Source: Sminthopsis crassicaudata (taxonomy: Eukaryota). Taken from it: a DNA stretch of 64,000 nt. The stretch is from contig NC_133618.1 of assembly GCF_048593235.1 (NCBI RefSeq), forward strand, positions 12,626,468 through 12,690,467, read 5' to 3'. The notes beneath the pieces were generated by a model, which did not search any database, was not told the origin of the DNA, and saw only the letters and a program-made list of their open reading frames with translations. Below, piece by piece: positions 1,921 through 40,713 of this stretch (its first letter is position 1; every line of letters begins with the position of its first letter). The position numbers and the translations under genes are program-made.

Positions 1921-2789
1921 TAGAAAGATATCCTTGTAAGAGGAATGGTAATTGTTAAAATTGTTAGGCAAGGGAAGAACGGCACCAAAATGCTTCCTTA
2001 GCTGGTGACTTGTTTAGGGCTTCTCTGCAAAGAGCAGGAGTTAAGGGTTTTGCTAATCCTAATTTGTTAAAGGACTGTTCCTTTATTTATTTATTTGTCT
2101 GTTTATTTATTTATTTTTCATATGGTTTACATTTGTGATGTGGGAAAACTGCATCTAGTGGGAGGATAGAAACTGACTTTGAGATTTCAGTTGGGGAAAG
2201 TTATGTAGCAGGCCAAGCCAGGGCGGATGTTCCAATGGAGAGATGCTTATTATACTTCTATCATGTATTATTATTATATGGATAATATTATCATATCTAT
2301 CATACAGACCTGCCTACGCACCCATCTACGTACTGAGCTGGAACTAGGGCAGGTGACCTGGGCTTTTTCTAGGGGGCTGACATCCAAGGGAGTGATACAT
2401 TGAATTCTAGTGAGGACTCCATTTATTCAGCATCCTTGTTGCAGGTATCTTTCCAGAAACATCAGGTGAGTTTTCCCAAGTCCACTCCAGCCCTGACCCA
2501 CTCTATTTCTATATCTCTCCCTTTTTTCCAGAAGCACATTCTACGGTGGCCATCTTGTGGCCTTGTTTTTGCTGTTCCCCTCCTCCCCATTGGTCAGTCT
2601 GTGTCCTGACAATGGAAATATCTGCTCTCAACCTCATTGCTTCTCTTCCCAAGTTGAATTTACCCTTCTGATTTGCTAGTCACAACACTGTCCATGTAAA
2701 TACTGAGTGCCTGGAAGACCTTCCCTGCCCCCTCCCACAATGGTGATGATTTTCATTTATTTGCCACCTAAAGGGTGGAATTAAATCAC

Positions 2790-2956
2790 AGAATCAGAGC
2801 TTCGGAGTTGGAAAGAACCTCAGAGCTCGTCTGATCCAAATTCCTCATTTTACAGTTGAAATTGCAGCTGAGTGGTTAAATAGTTTGTCCTGAGTCAGAA
2901 GTGGCAGGGTCTGGATTGGAACCCGGTCCTCTGGTCCCAAAGTCAAGCCTCTAGAC
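2790..2956 (-). mobile_element. MIR3 SINE (host of the hAT MITE)
   Basis: agagcttcggagttggaaagaacctcagagctc...ttcctcattttacag...ggattggaacccggtcctctgg. Confidence 0.7.
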
Positions 2957-3121
2957 CAGTGGTCCTCAAACTTTTTAAGTAGGGGGCCAGTTCACTGTCC
3001 CTCAGACTGTGAGAGGCCGGACGAGTAAAAACAAAAGCTCACACTTTGTCTCCCCCCTCAGCCCATTTGCCAAAACTCTGCCGCTGCATCTGGCCCACAG
3101 GCCATAGTTTGAGAACCCCTG
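2957..3121 (+). mobile_element. hAT/Charlie non-autonomous DNA transposon (MITE), OC1/OposCharlie1-like, 165 bp
   Basis: 16-bp TIRs CAGTGGTCCTCAAACT / AGTTTGAGAACCCCTG (2 mismatches); 8-bp TSD CTCTAGAC (2949-2956) / ATCTAGAC (3122-3129) fitting NTCTAGAN; internal ggccagttcactgtccctcagactgt matches recalled OC1 MITE consensus. Confidence 0.88.
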
Positions 3122-4984
3122 ATCTAGACCTTTACCATAGGAGGCTGCCCCACCATCCCTAAGGAGGGAGGCCGCTTGTGTTTGGGCCAGGCCACCTTAT
3201 TGTCAAACCTGTGTTCTCTGGCCTTTTCCCAAGAATGGCACCTAAGGTAAAGGCGCCTAAAGCTGCTTCCCTCCCTGGGCCGCCAGAGGCATCCGTTTGA
3301 AAATCATGGACTATGGGAGTCACTCTGATAGTTTTTCTGACCTTGACTGGGGTGGGGGGCAGAGCCTTTTGTTTGGGCACTGGGGAGACTACTTCCCTTC
3401 CTCCCTTCTTGCCCTTCCTCCTCCCAGTACCTTCCACCTTCTATCCTTTGGGCTGCCTGCTGGAGGCCTCCTTCCTTGTCTCTCCATTATTCCTGCTGGA
3501 GTTCCTTTAAAGGTGGGGGTGGTTAGGACCTCCTCAGATCTGCTGCTTGCTTTGGAGGAGAGGGGAAGTGAGCTTTTGGGGACTCTCAGGGATTTGGGGG
3601 CAGCCAGGCTTCTCCCTGTAGGGTATCTTAGGGCCCCTGGCTTGACTGAGGAATGGTGAAGGGTTGCTGGAGCTCGGGAAGATCTCCCCTCGGGTCTAGA
3701 TTTGGAGTCATAAATTGAGGGCTGCCTGGGCCTCGGCCGATCTAGCTCTGTACCCCACCTTTACAGGTGAGGAGCTGACTTGCCAAGGACACCCAGGTAA
3801 CAAGCAGCACGGGGGGGGGGGGGCAGCATTTGGGCCTCAGGGCTCTGATTTTAAGGCCATTCCCTTGATGCCACAAAGGCCCGGATCGCAATCCCAGCTT
3901 GCTGTGCGACTTCAGTGTCACTGCCCCTGGCTGGACCCCACTCTTCTCTTCCGTAAAAGACCCGATGGCCCCAGAGGAAACCTTCTAATAAATAGCTCTG
4001 GGTATGGGAGGGGCCTCCCCGGGCGGGATCGGGCCCTGGAAGGCCCCGGACTTCAGGCTGGGTGATGGGCATTTCCTGCAGCAGCATCTCACGTCGGCCT
4101 GGCTGCAGCCCAGCCTCCCCTGGCATGCCTCCCGCCCCCAGGTTCCAGAGGACCTCTCCTTCTTTTAAATGCAGCTGCCCAGCAACGGCGGCCGCGAGCC
4201 CCCTCTCCTCGCCTCCCTTCCCCGGTTTTGCATCTTGCAGAGCCCCGCCCTCCCTGGATGCTCCGCGCACTCCCCGGAGCTGGTGCGCCACGCCGGCCGC
4301 AGCATCCCCGCGCGCGGGGGGCTCGGGCTCCGCAGAGCGCAGGGCGTGGCCCGGCTGCTGCATCGCTCGCCCGCGGCTCGCGCCCCCGTTCCCTCCCTGC
4401 AGGGCGGTTCCGGCCCCCAGCGCGAGCCTTCCCGGAAGGGAGGGAGGGAGGAGGGCTGGGTCGCTGGGGCCCCTCCCGCAGCCGTCCGCCCAAGCCATTG
4501 GCTCTGCGGCAGTCACCCTACGCGGGGCCGGGGACGAGGACGGACGGGAGCTGCCAGCTCGCGGGAGAGGCGTGCATGCGCGCGTGCCCACTCCCCGCAT
4601 GCACTTCTGCAGCGGTCCCACTCCTCCCCTCCCCCCGTTCTGGCAGGGCCTCCCCCCCAGCCCCAGGGCGCTGCAGAGTCTGCCTCGGGGACTGCTGCAG
4701 CTGCAGGACTGCGGGATGGCGCGAGCGCGGCAGCGGCGGCTGCAGTTGGCGCGAGCCCCAGTCCCCGGCCGCCCCAGCCCCGGGCCTCGCTCGGCTCCCG
4801 GGCCCAGCCCCTCATTGCACCACTTGCTTAGTCATTTGCATACCCCTTTCGCCTCAGCCAATCAGCGCCCGCCCCCGCCGAAGCGGACGGCTTTTGCCGA
4901 GGAGGAAAGGGAGTGGTTGGTGGCGCATGCGCCGCGGCATCAGCCTGGAACCCAGGCTTTTATTGCTGTCTCTACGCCCGCACC

Positions 4985-5263
4985 CCCCCTCCCATCTCTC
5001 TCGCGCTCTCCCTCTCCCTCCCTCTCTCCCTCTCTCTCTCTCTCTCTTTTTTGCTCTGAGCCGGGGTTGGGCTTGGAGCAGAGGAAGAAAGAGAGGCAGC
5101 CAGAGCGCGGGTCGCATTCGCTCCCCGTCGGCGCCCTCGGCTAGCAGCCTCCGCACCCGCCCGCCCGTTCCTGCATCCTGCAGAGAGCCGGGCTCCTCTC
5201 CGGGCACCCGCGGCCGGCCGAGCGGCAGTTCCTTGCGGTTTCTGGTCCCCGAGCGCGAGCGCG
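4985..5263 (+). other. DPYSL2: DPYSL2 exon 1 5'UTR (start approximate) with pyrimidine/(CT)9 repeat
   Basis: ATG-free stretch before 5264; (CT)9 at 5030-5047 followed by a T-run and gaggaagaaagagag, resembling the human DPYSL2B 5'UTR as recalled; TSS not determinable from sequence. Confidence 0.65.
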
Positions 5264-5302
5264 ATGTCTTATCAGGGGAAGAAAAACATTCCGCGCATCA
5301 CG
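5264..5302 (+). CDS. DPYSL2: DPYSL2/CRMP2 short (B) isoform coding exon 1 (MSYQGKKNIPRIT, codons 1-13)
   Basis: ATG at 5264 (gcgATGt), 13 codons giving the canonical CRMP N-terminus; donor gtgagt at 5303; lies inside a CpG island. Confidence 0.98.
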
Positions 5303-5799
5303 GTGAGTCCGGGGACGGAGGCGCCCTTTGTGCGGCGGCGAGAAGGGAGAGGGCGGGCGGGAGCGGGGGAGAGATTAGTGGGGATCCCTCCCCAGGACTA
5401 ATCCGCCGCTGAGCGCAGGCTTTAAGCGCGGAGCGTAATTGCATTACGGTTTCCTGCTTTGGGGGCCGAGCCTCACACGGCCCTCGGTGGCCGGGGCGGC
5501 GGGGATGCTCCAGCCCCGATTGCGCCGGTGTCGGAGCGGAGGATGCCCGGCCCGGGGGCTGCGGTGGGGCCCGGGGCGGGGCGCTCCCCCTCCCAAGAAA
5601 AGGTGTCAGCCTCCCCCTCCTCCCCTCCGGAGAAAGAAGGGTGTGTGCGGGGCGGGGTGGGTGATGGGGCAGGGGGATAATGACAGAAGAGGACGGAGGG
5701 GGAAATCCGGGACGTGCGTGTCCGGGGGGATGATGGAGAGCCCGCGAGGCTCCGTCGGTGGGGCCGTCCTCCCCCGCCCGCGGCGGGTTTTGTTACCTC

Positions 5800-6420
5800 T
5801 TTCCCTGTCTCTCATTCCTCCTTTTTCCTCCCCATCCCTGTGAGCTCTCCTCCCTCCTTCCTCTCTGCTGCTTCTTTCTCTCTCCTCCTCCCCCTGCGCA
5901 TTTCCCCTTCTCTTCTCCCTCCTCCTTCGTCCCTGGCTTCTTTTACTTCTTTCTCCCCTTCCTCATTTGTCCCCTCCTGCCCACTCCCTTTTCTCCCTTC
6001 ACCCACTTTCTCTCCCCTTATTTCCTCTTCCTTCCTCCATCCCTTTTCTTCCCCTCATCTCTTTTCTTCCTCATCATTCTCTCTCCTCCCCTCAGTCTTT
6101 TCCTCCTCCCTCATTCCCTCTCCTCCCCTCAGTCTTTTCCTCCTCTTTCAATCCCTCTCCTCCCCTCAGTCTTTTCCTCCTCTTTCAATCCCTCTCCTCC
6201 CCTCAGTCTTTTCCTCCTCTTTCAATCCCTCTCCTCCCCTCAGTCTTTTCCTCCTCTTTCAATCCCTCTCCTCCCCTCCGTTCTTTTCCTCCTCCCTCAT
6301 TCCCTCTCCTCCCCTCAGTCTTTTCCTCCTCCCTCATTCCCTCTCCTCCCATCCTTGTCTTCCCCTCCCCAATCCGTGTCCCTGGATCCGTCTCCCTCCG
6401 TCTCTCCCTCTTTCCTCCCT
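5800..6420 (+). repeat. Polypyrimidine tract containing a 37-bp minisatellite (7 copies + partial, 6081-6350)
   Basis: Unit ctctcctcccctcagtcttttcctcctctttcaatcc (variant ...ccctcattcc) starting at 6081, 6118, 6155, 6192, 6229, 6266, 6303. Confidence 0.93.
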
Positions 6421-7100
6421 GGGCTTGGCGCTCTTTCTCCTGGCGCCGCTGCTGTGGCGGGGCTCCTGGGTTCCCGAGCTCCCCATCCCTCCCCCGCTGC
6501 CCTCCTTTTGCCCGCCCGCCAGCCCCGGCTCATACAAAGAGGCTCTCGCCGTCAGGGCAGCGCCGGGTGTTTGTCCGGAGGGAATGGCGCTGCTCCCGAG
6601 CCCGAGCGGAACAGATGGCCCCTGAGCTGCCGTCCCCTCCAGCCCCGCACAAAACAATGATGACAAAGGGTGGGAGGATGCTGCGGCCGCCGCTGCTGCT
6701 GCCTCCTCTTCCCCTCCCCCCTCCTCCTCCCTCCTTTTACAAATCATCACAAAAACAAATCCACGTCTTAGAGCCTCAGAGAAGGGTTTTTGCCCCCTCC
6801 CCGCCCCCATCGTCCTCCCTGGACACATCTCGCCAGCTCTTGTGCATCCCTGAGTGGGGGGGGGGGAGCGGGAGCGGGAGCGGGAGGGCCGGAGGGAGGG
6901 AGGGAGGGCGGTCATTGTTATGTAACTCTGTGTTTTTCTCCAGTCCGGTCCCAATTTCTGGGTAGAAGGCTGAGGAAGAGGCCTTGGACCGGTCCCCAGC
7001 GGAAGGATGCTCGCGCTGGGCCATCCTCCGGGCCTCTCTCCCTGCAGGGAGAGTCCGGCCTCCCCAACCGGAGGGCACACCCATCTCTGCTTCTTTCCTT
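6420..7100. promoter_or_regulatory. Second CpG/GC-rich block in intron 1 (candidate alternative promoter or enhancer)
   Basis: CpG-dense, G-runs, SOX-type motifs (aacaatg, acaaag near 6653-6668; cattgtt near 6914-6920). Confidence 0.45.
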
Positions 7101-7474: not shown

Positions 7475-9822
7475 CAAAAAATAAATAAAATCAGATTTTT
7501 TCCCCCTCTCTTCCATTCTCTCCCCCCTTCCCATTCCCCTTCTCCCAGTAGCATCTGTAGAATGTATGAGCCCTGTAGCATGACCTGCATGGGATGACGG
7601 AAGCTGGAAGGAACCTCAGAGATCATCTCCACTTTGGTATACAGAAACTGAAGCCAGGGAGGGTTAAAATGGTATTTTTTGTAAGAAAGAAAAAAAAATA
7701 AAATAAAGTCAGATCCTCTTCCATCCTCTCCAATTCCCCATCTCCCAGTAGCATCTGTAGCATTGTATGATTCCTCTATAGCATGACCAGCATGCTGGAA
7801 GCTGGAAGGAACCTCAGAGATCATCTCACTTTGGTATACAGAAATTGAAGCCAGGGAGGTTAAAATGGTATTTTTTTGTAAAAAAAAAAGCAAAAAAAAA
7901 ATGAAGTCAGATCCTTCCCTTCTCTTCCATTCTCCCCCCAATTCCTCATCTCCCAATAGCATCTGTAGAATGTATGATCCCTTGTAGCCTGACTAGCATG
8001 GATGACGGAAGCTGGAAGGAACTTCAGAGATCATCTCCACTTTGGTATACAGAAATTGAAGCCAGGGAGGTTAAAATGGTATTTTTCATAAAAAAATAAA
8101 CTCAGATCCTCTTCCATCCCTTCTCCAATTCCCCATCTCCCAATAGCATCTGTAGAATGTATGATCCCTTGTGTATGACCATCGTGGGATGACAGAAGCT
8201 GGAAGGAGCCTCAGAGGATCATGACTGCTTCAGTCTATAGAAACTGAAGCCCAGACATAAGAAAAGCAAAAAAATCAAATCAAATCAGATTCTTCCCTTT
8301 CTCTTCCATCCCCTCTCCAATTCCCCATCTCCAAGAGCATCTGTAGAATGTATGATCCCTTGTGTATGACCATCGTGGGATGACAGAAGCTGGAAGGAGC
8401 CTCAGAGATCATGACTGCTTCAGTCTATAGAAACTGAAGCCCAGACATAAGAAAAGCAAAAAAATCAAATCAAATCAGATTCTTCCTTTCTCTTCCATCC
8501 CTTCTCCAATTCCCCATCTCCCAAGAGCATCTGTAGAATCTATGATCCCTTGTGTATGACCATCATGGGATGACAGAAGCTGGAAGGAACCTCAGAGATC
8601 ATCTCCACTTCAGTATACAGAAACTGAAACCAGGGAGGTTAAAATGGTATATTTCATAAAAAAAAAATAAAATCAGATTCTTCCTTCTCTTCCATCTCTT
8701 CTCCAATTCCCCATCTCCCAATAGCTTCTGTAGAATGTATGATCCCTTGTGTATGACCAGGAAGGGATGACAGAAGCTGGAAGGAACCTCAGAGATCATG
8801 ACTGCTTCAGTATGTAGAAACTGAAGCCCAGACATAAGAAAAGCAAAAAAATCAAATCAAATCAGATTCTTCCTTTCTCTTCCATCCCTTCTCCAATTCC
8901 CCTTCTCCCAGTAGCATCTGGAGAATGTATGATCCTTTGTAGCCTGACCAGGAAGGGATGACAGAAGCTGGAAGGAACCTCAGAGATCACAAACATTTCA
9001 GAAACTGAAGCCCAGGGAGGTTAAAATGTTATTTTTCATAAGAAAGCAAAAAAGAAATAAAATCAGATCCTTCCCTTCTCTTCCATCCCCTCTCCAATTC
9101 CCCATCTCCCAATAGCATCTGTAGAATCTATGATCCCTTGTGTATGACCATCATGGGATGACAGAAGCTGGAAGGAACCTCAGAGATCATCTCCACTTCA
9201 GTATACAGAAACTGAAACCAGGGAGGTTAAAATGGTATATATATTTCATAAAAAAAATAAAATCAGATTCTTCCCTTCTCTTCCATTTCTTCTCCAATTC
9301 CCCATCTCCCAATAGCTTCTGTAGAATGTATGATCCCTTGTGTATGACCAGGAAGGGATGACAGAAGCTGGAAGGAGCCTCAGAGATCATGACTGCTTCA
9401 GTATGTAGAAACTGAAGCCCAGACATAAGAAAAGTAAAAAAATCAAATCAAATCAAATTCTTCCTTTCTCTTCCATCCCTTCTCCAATTCCCCTTCTCCC
9501 AGTAGCATCTGGAGAATGTATGATCCTTTGTAGCCTGACCAGGAAGGGATGACAGAAGCTGGAAGGAACCTCAGAGATCATGAACGTTTCAGAAACTGAA
9601 GCCCAGGCATAAGGATAGCAATAAAATAAAACTCCGATTCTTCCTTTCTCTTCCATCCCCTCTCCAGTTCCCCTTCTCCCAATAACAGCTGTAGAATGTA
9701 TCATCCTTTGGAGCATGACCATCATGGGATGACAGAAGCTGGAAGGAACCTCAGAGATTATGAGCACTTCAGTCTACAAAAACTGAAGTCCAGGGAGGTT
9801 AAAATGTTACTTTTCATAAGAA

Positions 9823-9870
<48 letters not shown>

Positions 9871-11968: not shown

Positions 11969-12058
<90 letters not shown>

Positions 12059-37830: not shown

Positions 37831-40713
37831 ATATATATACAGCACTTTAAAGTCTATAAACCATTCATCGATATTAATTTGATCTTCACAATAATCCTGT
37901 GAAATAAGTGCTATTATTTAACCCATCTTACAGAAGGAGAGAGAAAACTGAGACTGAGAAAGGTTAGTGAGGAGCTTGTCTGGCATTACAGAGCTAATAA
38001 GTGGCAGAAACAGGATTAGAACCAGGATTGTCAAGATTGGAAGCTGAGGTTTTTAATGAAGTTAGAAGAGGAAATGTAGATTGTCATGAAAAGCTTCCTG
38101 GGAAACATGGGATCTGACCCGGCTCTAGGAAGGCAGGTGGGATGCATCCTGAGCAGTGGAAGGCTTTGCAGAAGGAGGGAGAGCAAAGCTCAGAGGAAGT
38201 GAATGCTGCTGGAATGTCCTGAGGACAGCAGGGCCGGCCGGGGTGGGGAGTGATGAGAAAATTGGAGAGATAGAGCAGGAATGAGCTGGGAGGACCATGA
38301 GTAACAGGCTGGAATGTGTCCCCAAAGCCCTGGGGGAGGGAGCTGCAAACTTGTGAGCTAAGCAGTGGAACCCTAGTGAGAAGGTCCATTCAGATGGAGC
38401 AATCCCTCCATTTCCCCTTTATTCCCACCNNNNNNNNNNNNNNNNNNNNNNNNNNNNNNNNNNNNNNNNNNNNNNNNNNNNNNNNNNNNNNNNNNNNNNN
38501 NNNNNNNNNNNNNNNNNNNNNNNNNNNNNNNNNNNNNNNNNNNNNNNNNNNNNNNNNNNNNNNNNNNNNNNNNTATGTATTTGTTCATTTTATTCATCCA
38601 TTTATTGATTTATTCATTCATTCATTTGTTTGTTCATTTATTTATTCATCCATTTATTGATTTATTCGTTCATCCATTCATTTATTTGTTCATTATTTAT
38701 TTATTTTATTCATAGCAGAAGGTACTAAATGACCCTTTCTGAGTCTCTGGCTTAGTCCCTCAGGCCATTCTTGTTTATAGGATCATACATTTAGGATCGG
38801 AAAGAACCTTAGAGATTGTTTATTCCAAACCTCTCATTTTACAGATGAGGAATCTGAGGCCCAAATAAGTTAAGCGCCTTGCCCAAAGTCACAGAACCAG
38901 TTGACAGGCGGGTCTTAAGTGCTCACTGTGTGCCAGGTACTGCACTAAAATCTGGGATTGCATATATTTATGAAAGAAAGGCATTCTTTGTCCTTAGGAA
39001 AGTTCCATTCTAATGGGGGAAGGTGAAGAGGGAGTGGGGAAAAGCTTGGAGGGTCAGGAGAGCTCTCAAGAAACGCTCTGTGTGGTGAGTGTAGGGTTGG
39101 GTAGAGCTGGTTCATGTGGCTCAGACTGGCCGTTGCTACCCATTTTCTCTTTTCTCATTTTCCCCATCCACGATTCTTTGTCACCCAGACTGCTCTCCTG
39201 CTAGCCGTCCTTCACAAACCTTCCCAGTCTCTTTACCCCTTCCCTGAAAACCATTCTTTCTCTCCTTGGGCTGCCCTGCTCTTCTAGCTCTAAGGATCTT
39301 CTTGGCTCAAACACCCCGTAGGATCATGGGATTCAGAGCCTATGGGGAGGAGCGCCAGGTAGGTGCATCTTGTTCCTTGGGTTTCTTTGATTTGGGGCCC
39401 GAGGGTGTCCCTTGGGTCACTGGGTTTCCCTCGGGGTTCCATCTTGGGTTTCCTGCTCTCTCCATTAGCACCCCAGATCTTCTGATGTTCCTGCCAGCTT
39501 TTTACCAATTTTGGCTGCCTTTAAGAAATGCCTTTGTGAGAACCTTGTGCCCTTGGCTCCTCCGAGCTTCGGTCCCCGAAGTGGAAGAGGATCTATGGGA
39601 GGAGGCCCTTTAAGTACACAGAGAGGAAGCCCAGGCCGGCTTTGGCTGAGGGTTTGAACTTTCGACAATCCAAACAATTGTGAAGGGTAATTAATGGGTC
39701 TCTGAACTCCCTGCCCCCTAATCTGGCCCAAACCCGTTGTCTAAACACACTAACTTCTCTTCAGCTATTGGGGCTGGGATCAGTGGAGGAGAAAGGGCCC
39801 TAGTCAACAGCCGGAGCCTGGCCCGAACTCGGCCAAGCCAGGGGCACACAATGGCACAATGGCCGTGTCCCAGAATAGAGACGTGTTGTGTTAAGTTCCT
39901 GAACTCGGTCCAGGCTCCTGGCGGGGCTTAGGGGTGGGAGAGCCTGTAAGTCCTGCTGGCTCTAGACAGACCCTAAATAACAGATGACGTCACCAGCACT
40001 TCCTGCCCTGATGGGCCGGCCTTCTCTGGGGGGCAAGTCAGAGAGTTGTGTAACCTTGGAAGTAGCCTTTGAGGCGGACCTCAGTGGGCCCCCACATCCT
40101 CAGCTGCAGGCTGACAGCTGGATTTTTCATACATGTTCCTAAGTAGGGGGGGGTTGGCAGGGAGCCTTGCGGCATCCCCAGGAGGAACAGTTAGGGCCTT
40201 CATTAATTAGGGACCTGTTTGTGAGTTGGCTGTTCAGTGTGGATTGTTTGAACTGGGCTCCCTTGTATTTGGAGCAGCCATCCTCAGCCACATCTGGAGG
40301 CTTGTGTTCGGTTCTGAGCACAATGGTTTAAGGGGGACACGGACCAAAGGGAGAGTGGCTAGGGGCGAGGAGGACGTGGAAGGGCCTCAATATCATGTCT
40401 AGCAGGGAGGGTGGAAGCCTGGAGAGGAGATGACAGCTGTCCACAAGGACTGGAAGGGCTGGCAAGAGCTTGGGATCAGCTTTGTTATTTCTGGCCCCAG
40501 AGGGCAGACGCAGGAGCAGTGGGGGTGGGGGAGTGGGAGATGCTCAGGCCAGTGTAGACATGGTGGGAAGAAAAACACCTGCTACTAATGAGAGCTGTCC
40601 CACAGGACAGCAGCCTCCTTAAGTGCGGCAGGACTGTCCTGCAGGAGAGTGGCCCACTTGGGGGAGGGAGAGCTGTCCCATGGGAGAATGGCCTTCTTGG
40701 GAGAGAGAAGGGG

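What the first reader, a model, noticed from the sequence alone, without database searches (positions are those of the whole stretch)
2949..3129. OC1-like hAT MITE, from a family known for horizontal transfer, nested in a MIR3 about 2 kb upstream of the DPYSL2 start
Seen: a 165-bp element with 16-bp TIRs and a 7/8-identical 8-bp TSD of the hAT/Charlie NTCTAGAN type, splitting an older MIR3 near its tRNA head. Known: OC1/OposCharlie1 hATs have a patchy distribution (opossum, dasyurids, bats, galago, tenrec, lizard, frog, a blood-feeding bug) attributed to horizontal transfer. Inference: this is a lineage-restricted insertion beside a neural promoter, and it also points to a dasyurid source for the window.
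Basis: partly seen in the sequence, partly recalled or inferred. Interest (0 to 1): 0.7.

Follow-up and report, generated by a model that had tools for sequence, protein, structure and literature searches.

The report
OC1 hAT transposon remnant upstream of DPYSL2
A 165-base dead copy of the known, horizontally spread OC1 "cut-and-paste" transposon sits 2.1 kb upstream of the DPYSL2 start codon; it is missing at the same spot in four related species, so it is real and lineage-specific but ordinary.

Summary
Window 2957-3121 is a 165-bp non-autonomous hAT element. Its 16-bp terminal inverted repeats match 14/16, and its 8-bp target-site duplication is CTCTAGAC / ATCTAGAC.

Both ends match the published OC1_Das consensus (Gilbert et al. 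2013) on the minus strand: 52/54 at the 3' end and 33/36 at the 5' end.

It is not the common 192-bp OC1_Das-NA form. Its middle looks like a different internal deletion of the autonomous element.

In four other coded organisms, about 8.6% diverged in the flanks, one single-copy contig each bridges the site. Each is 173 nt shorter than the window, which equals the element plus one duplication. All four genomes carry thousands of OC1_Das-NA-type pieces, which supports a dasyurid source.

The DPYSL2 ATG lies at 5264, 2142 bp downstream of the element. The host repeat looks like an antisense MIR3-type SINE, but I judged that only by eye.

Nothing points to a regulatory role.

This is one of thousands of copies of a described family: already known, low interest. 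The scan's first readers noted OC1-like elements on two other pieces of this genome.

The parts
2949..2956 (.). Left copy of the 8-bp target-site duplication, CTCTAGAC
   Evidence: It fits the hAT pattern nTnnnnAn (established knowledge). The orthologous contigs of organisms B-E carry this stretch once only.
2957..3121 (-). Non-autonomous OC1 (OposCharlie1, hAT) element, 165 bp, minus orientation relative to the published consensus, with no coding capacity
   Evidence: The longest stop-free stretch is 42 codons.
2957..3010 (-). 3' terminal 54 nt of OC1_Das, including the 16-bp TIR (2957-2972)
   Evidence: 52/54 to the published consensus, with 0 chance matches in 100 shuffles. This stretch carries the largest pile-up of contigs from B-E (table 2).
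3011..3085 (-). Internal part that departs from the 192-bp OC1_Das-NA form. By eye it is made of the 3' subterminal region, autonomous-element positions about 139-167 and about 59-81
   Evidence: GAGACAGAGTGTGAG (OC1_Das-Auto 153-167) hits 3038-3052 on the minus strand with 1 mismatch, chance 0.02. Loose ends behind 3010 and before 3076/3083 show that most family copies leave this copy's sequence there. A 'TA put in behind 3022' appears in 9-12 contigs per run. The rest was aligned by eye.
3086..3121 (-). 5' terminal 36 nt of OC1_Das, including the 16-bp TIR (3106-3121)
   Evidence: 33/36 to the published autonomous consensus, with 0 chance matches.
3122..3129 (.). Right copy of the target-site duplication, ATCTAGAC
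2780..2956 (-). Left part of the interrupted host repeat: an antisense MIR-type SINE whose tail resembles the L3/CR1-like tail of MIR3
   Evidence: By-eye comparison with the MIR/MIR3 consensus recalled from memory. Contig depth is 20-30 times single-copy level at 2770-2883. There are weak matches to 38799-38848 and 1834-1858 of the window. No tRNA was called.
3130..3160 (-). Right part of the same SINE, the last bases of its tRNA-derived head; the end point is approximate
   Evidence: By eye only. It is contiguous with the left part in the orthologous contigs of B-E.
5264..5302 (+). Start of the DPYSL2 (CRMP2B-type) coding sequence, MSYQGKKNIPRIT, inside a CpG island at about 4000-7000
   Evidence: Exon 2 at 11969-12058 scores best against DPYSL2 chains.

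Best explanation
This is an inert, non-autonomous copy of the hAT transposon OC1 (OposCharlie1, dasyurid lineage OC1_Das), lying in minus orientation. It arose as an internal-deletion derivative of an autonomous OC1 that kept both termini. OC1 transposase supplied by another copy moved it in trans, and it integrated into the tRNA-derived head of an older antisense MIR3-type SINE. The staggered cut typical of hAT made the 8-bp duplication. Integration happened on the branch leading to the source organism, after that branch split from the four relatives compared here. The split is dated to about 14 My with the rate used by Gilbert 2013. The copy has since decayed neutrally, with one change in each TIR and CpG-to-CpA/TpG changes. 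The following are shown: the anatomy, the family membership of both ends, the empty orthologous sites and the abundance of the family in the relatives. The following are inferred: mobilisation in trans, the dating, neutrality and the horizontal origin of the family. The last of these comes from the literature and was not tested here.
For: The TIRs and TSD are present with a chance expectation of 0.003 per window. The published OC1_Das 3' terminal 54 nt match 2957-3010 on the minus strand with 2 mismatches. The 5' terminal 36 nt match 3086-3121 on the minus strand with 3 mismatches. Both searches gave 0 chance matches. The consensus was read. An internal 15-mer of the autonomous element is present. 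In each of organisms B, C, D and E, one contig at single-copy depth joins 2954 to 3137 with 9 letters between, which makes it 173 nt shorter than the window, equal to 165 + 8 (tables 5, 5c, 8). The flanks are 8.5-8.7% diverged, which gives about 14 My. Between 4,435 and 5,760 contig pieces per run pile on the element. Their loose-end consensus equals the internal sequence of OC1_Das-NA. That figure is in line with the 5,208 copies reported for the devil. Gilbert 2013 likewise found devil copies absent at the orthologous dunnart sites, without footprints.
Against: The ends are 5.6% from the consensus, which gives about 18 +/- 7.5 My. That is nominally older than the split of about 14 My, although 4 of the 5 changes at the 5' end counted against the NA form are CpG transitions and only 90 nt were compared. 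At the empty site, 6 of the 9 letters beside the junction differ between the window and B-E, far above the flank divergence (P about 3e-5), and I cannot explain this. I did not measure directly whether the source organism itself carries many copies; the only indication is two unchecked first-reader notes.
Confidence: 0.9

Rival explanations
1. The insertion is older than the split, and the element was excised or deleted in the common ancestor of organisms B-E. On this reading the 'empty' site is a repaired donor site, not a site that was never occupied.
For: 6 of the 9 letters at the junction differ between the window and B-E, against 8.6% in the flanks, which could be a repair scar. The divergence of the ends from the consensus (about 18 My) is nominally older than the split (about 14 My).
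Against: The B-E site has exactly the length of an unduplicated target, whereas hAT excision usually leaves most of both TSD copies plus a few altered bases (established knowledge of hAT footprints). All four organisms share the same 9 letters. Both TSD copies in the window agree on TCTAGAC, so the target already read that way at insertion. Gilbert 2013 saw no footprints at three comparable loci. The dating error bars overlap widely.
Confidence: 0.06
2. The element has been co-opted as a lineage-specific cis-regulatory element of the DPYSL2 (CRMP2B) promoter.
For: The only support is position: it lies 2.1 kb upstream of the ATG and about 0.9 kb upstream of the CpG island.
Against: The copy shows ordinary neutral decay, with TIR changes and CpG loss: 3 CpG are left against 26 TpG+CpA. 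Four relatives have the same gene and CpG island without it. No Rfam match or other signal lies over it. No expression or chromatin data could be consulted.
Confidence: 0.03
3. [quoted passage not shown]
For: [quoted passage not shown] Many hAT families share CAG...CTG ends. A metagenome MITE (L001-L003) shares only the first 34 nt with OC1.
Against: 90 terminal nt match OC1_Das with only 5 changes, and an internal autonomous-element 15-mer is present. The copies from B-E that pile on it continue into OC1_Das-NA sequence.
Confidence: 0.01

Closest known systems
OC1_Das autonomous element (OposCharlie1 of Dasyuridae; 2,571 bp; Gilbert et al. 2013, PMC3621081)
   Same: The 16-bp TIRs match 15/16 each. 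The 5' 36 nt match 33/36 and the 3' 54 nt match 52/54. There is an 8-bp TSD. The internal pieces look like positions about 59-81 and about 139-167.
   Different: It is 165 bp instead of 2,571 bp, has no transposase gene, and is therefore dependent on transposase from elsewhere.
OC1_Das-NA, the major 192-bp MITE of the devil (same paper, Additional file 1)
   Same: The termini and 3' subterminal region are the same, and so are the size class and the mode of origin by internal deletion.
   Different: The internal segment differs. The published form has breakpoints at 36 and 2337, while this copy keeps 5' material beyond position 36 and lacks the NA-specific middle. Copies in B-E leave this copy's sequence behind 3010 and before 3076/3083.
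Devil OC1_Das_NA insertions with empty orthologous sites in the dunnart (Gilbert et al. 2013, Additional files 5-7)
   Same: The pattern is the same: occupied in one dasyurid lineage and empty in another, with no obvious footprint.
   Different: This locus is occupied in the source organism and empty in four other organisms. The species names are coded here.
[quoted passage not shown] 2015, PMC4408412)
   Same: This is another horizontally spread hAT family with MITEs in Australian marsupials.
   Different: It has a different consensus and a wider marsupial distribution. Its sequence could not be compared here; it is excluded only by the strength of the match to OC1.

Membership tests
hAT superfamily (non-autonomous member) | Short terminal inverted repeats | tested here: met
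   The 16-bp arms match 14/16.
hAT superfamily (non-autonomous member) | 8-bp target-site duplication fitting nTnnnnAn | tested here: met
   The copies are CTCTAGAC / ATCTAGAC. The orthologous contigs are shorter by element + 8 nt.
OC1 / OposCharlie1 (OC1_Das) | Termini and subterminal sequence matching the family consensus | tested here: met
   The match is 52/54 at the 3' end and 33/36 at the 5' end against the published consensus.
OC1 / OposCharlie1 (OC1_Das) | Internal sequence derived from the autonomous element | tested here: inconclusive
   One 15-mer (Auto 153-167) matches with 1 mismatch, chance 0.02. The rest was aligned by eye only; no full computed alignment was made because the consensus has no reference.
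OC1 / OposCharlie1 (OC1_Das) | Multi-copy family in the genome and its relatives | tested here: met
   Thousands of contig pieces from each of organisms B-E lie on the element. For the source organism itself there are only two unchecked notes.
OC1_Das-NA (192-bp major MITE) | Deletion breakpoints at 36/2337 and the NA-specific internal sequence | tested here: not met
   The loose-end consensus of other copies (equal to NA internal sequence) departs from this copy behind 3010 and before 3076/3083. By eye the middle differs.
Horizontally transferred transposon | Identity between distant hosts too high for vertical descent, with a patchy distribution | not tested
   Taken from Gilbert 2013 and Gallus 2015. 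This single copy says nothing on it.
MIR3 (CORE-SINE with an L3/CR1-type tail) as host repeat | tRNA-derived head, CORE region and L3-like tail matching the consensus | not testable with these tools
   No Dfam/Repbase library was available. The resemblance is by eye to a consensus recalled from memory. ARAGORN finds no tRNA. A contig pile-up at 2770-2883 shows that the stretch is repeated.

The most novel reading that the evidence does not exclude
This copy may represent a second, undescribed non-autonomous OC1 subfamily. That subfamily would keep autonomous-element positions about 59-81 and about 139-167 and would have amplified specifically in the source organism's lineage after it split from the other dasyurids. 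This would mean OC1 transposase stayed active there later than the roughly 17-My burst described for the devil.
Probability: 0.15. Interest if true: 0.3.

Novelty: already known. Interest (0 to 1): 0.15.

Why it matters
It matters little beyond annotation. It is one more dated presence/absence marker for dasyurid phylogeny. It also adds one example showing that OC1 kept transposing, or sorting, after dasyurid lineages split, as Gilbert et al. 2013 proposed. It helps to place the window's source among dasyurids. There is no sign that it affects DPYSL2.

Tried and rejected
I looked for further copies in the window and found none.

I tried to obtain an OC1 copy by reference from public collections so that a full alignment could be computed. 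A 26-mer in metagenome contigs and a 25-mer in viral contigs found nothing. The 5' 23-mer found three contigs (L001-L003) carrying a different hAT MITE that shares only the first 34 nt, so it is no use as an OC1 reference.

The full-length alignment and the exact breakpoints are therefore by eye. Only three natural end or internal motifs were searched as patterns.

ARAGORN and Rfam over 2500-3600 gave nothing relevant. There was one sub-threshold pRNA match at 2541-2611, E 0.29, which I take as chance.

BLAST of the reconstructed pre-insertion SINE against the window gave only two weak matches, too few to build a local SINE consensus and polarise the junction differences.

The findings search by sequence was blank.

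The species names of organisms A-E are coded, so no named phylogeny could be given.

Full report
**Observation**

The sequence at 2949-3129 reads CTCTAGAC | CAGTGGTCCTCAAACT ... AGTTTGAGAACCCCTG | ATCTAGAC.
- The repeat finder reports the inverted arms and the direct repeat TCTAGACC at 2950-2957 and 3123-3130.
- The 16-mer occurs only at these two places in the window, once on each strand.
- BLAST of the 165-bp element against the window finds no other copy.
- A 14/16 TIR flanked by a 7/8 duplication is expected about 0.003 times per 64-kb window.

The anatomy is therefore real and not a chance match.

**Family**

Gilbert et al. 2013 (PMC3621081) give consensus sequences for the dasyurid OC1 autonomous element (OC1_Das-Auto, 2,571 bp) and for its major MITE (OC1_Das-NA, 192 bp). 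I read both.
- The last 54 nt of that consensus hit 2957-3010 on the minus strand with 2 mismatches.
- The first 36 nt hit 3086-3121 on the minus strand with 3 mismatches.
- Neither pattern matched in any of 100 shuffles.

The element is thus an OC1 copy in minus orientation. Each TIR is one substitution away from the consensus CAGGGGTCCTCAAACT.

Read against the NA form, four of the five differences in the last 39 nt are CG-to-CA or CG-to-TG changes. That is the usual decay of methylated CpG. I saw this in the sequence by eye.

**Not the standard MITE**

The middle of the copy (3011-3085) does not follow OC1_Das-NA. By eye it consists of three parts:
- the 3' subterminal region, with a two-base gap;
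- a stretch resembling autonomous positions about 139-167;
- a stretch resembling positions about 59-81.

The 15-mer at autonomous positions 153-167 hits 3038-3052 on the minus strand with one mismatch (chance 0.02).

Contigs of other copies laid on the element stop following it behind 3010 and before 3076/3083. Their loose-end consensus there is the internal sequence of OC1_Das-NA. In addition, 9-12 contigs per run carry a TA after 3022, where this copy has a gap.

The copy is therefore a different internal-deletion derivative that still kept both ends. The breakpoints are approximate.

**Empty orthologous sites**

The run search found the stretch in a source organism A. It found small shares in four other organisms, B-E, from three studies. 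I laid one run of each of B-E on 2200-3900 at 80% likeness.
- In every one of the four, a single contig at single-copy depth covers the left flank up to 2954 and the right flank from 3137.
- Nine letters (TTCCTCCCT) lie between the two flanks.
- The window has 2 + 7 = 9 letters there once 2957-3129 is removed. The orthologues are therefore exactly 173 nt shorter, which is 165 (element) + 8 (one TSD copy).

This is what a site that was never occupied should look like.

The flanks differ from the window at 129/1519 and 132/1519 positions (8.5-8.7%). With the neutral rate used by Gilbert 2013 (3.21e-9 per site per year), this puts the split at about 14 My. That is within the 14-23 My range quoted there for dunnart versus devil.

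The ends of the element are 5/90 (5.6%) from the consensus, which gives about 18 +/- 7.5 My. This overlaps the split date once CpG changes and the short length compared are allowed for.

**Family abundance and the source**

Between 4,435 and 5,760 contig pieces per run lie on the element in B-E. That is of the order of the 5,208 copies reported for the devil.

Their internal sequence is that of OC1_Das-NA, a form described from the devil and the dunnart. OC1 was not detected in wallaby or bandicoot, and among other Australian orders only in the honey possum.

Relatives only 8.6% away that carry this family make a dasyurid source the sensible reading. The species names are coded, however, so this remains indirect.

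Two unchecked first-reader notes report OC1-like elements on other pieces of the same genome.

**Surroundings**

The gene downstream starts with MSYQGKKNIPRIT at 5264. Its second exon at 11969-12058 scores best against DPYSL2 chains, just above DPYSL3. I searched the exons apart and made no joined model.
- 2142 bp lie between the element and the ATG.
- A CpG island spans about 4000-7000, so the element lies about 0.9 kb outside it.

The host repeat reads, by eye, as an antisense MIR-type SINE with the L3/CR1-like tail of MIR3. The insertion sits about 20 nt from the SINE's 5' end, in the tRNA-derived head.

This rests on a consensus recalled from memory. The only computed support is a 20-30-fold contig pile-up at 2770-2883 and two weak matches inside the window. 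ARAGORN calls no tRNA.

**Mechanism**

Shown here: TIRs, TSD, family ends, the empty sites, and the absence of an ORF (longest open stretch 42 codons).

Inferred from established hAT biology:
- a deletion derivative made during repair of an autonomous copy;
- mobilisation in trans by OC1 transposase;
- integration with an 8-bp staggered cut;
- neutral decay afterwards.

The horizontal origin of the family comes from the literature. A single copy cannot test it.

**Unexplained**

The nine letters at the junction differ at 6 positions between the window (ACCTTTACC) and B-E (TTCCTCCCT). That is far above the flank divergence (P about 3e-5).

Both TSD copies in the window agree on TCTAGAC, so the window's reading predates the insertion. 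The length is unchanged, which argues against an excision scar. Even so, this keeps a small probability on the rival that the element was lost in the ancestor of B-E.

**Regulatory role**

There is no evidence for one. Four relatives have the same promoter region without the element. The copy shows ordinary decay, and no Rfam match lies over it. Expression and chromatin data could not be consulted.

**Verdict**

The finding is an ordinary, already described kind of element: one of thousands of OC1 copies in dasyurid genomes. Its small points of interest are its use as a presence/absence marker and its non-standard internal structure.

Noticed in passing
L002:5801-6035 (also L001:3729-3806 and L003:5829-6063): Three JGI metagenome contigs of one ORF-poor, eukaryote-like organism carry a hAT-type MITE of about 235 bp. 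Its first 34 nt are nearly identical to the 5' end of OC1_Das-NA, and the rest is unrelated. Its flanks ACCTATGG / GCCTACGG look like an 8-bp TSD.
   Followed up: partly
window 2955-2956 and 3130-3136 against the orthologous contigs of organisms B-E: 6 of the 9 letters next to the insertion point differ between the window and all four relatives, against 8.6% in the flanks. The length is unchanged and the cause is unknown.
   Followed up: partly
window 7529-9806: A tandem array with periods of 190 and 387 bp lies in the first intron of the DPYSL2-type gene, followed by a 43-nt A run at 9826-9868. The scan has already noted it as s1-153632.
   Followed up: no
window 2770-2883 and 3397-3453: Contigs of the four relatives pile up 10-30 times above single-copy level here, marking repeated SINE-type sequence on both sides of the element.
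   Followed up: no
window 4000-7000: A CpG island (GC 0.57-0.73, CpG observed/expected 0.5-0.9) surrounds the first coding exon of the DPYSL2-type gene.
   Followed up: no
window 13399-59077: Eleven runs of N (2,363 bases in all) lie in the gene body.
   Followed up: no
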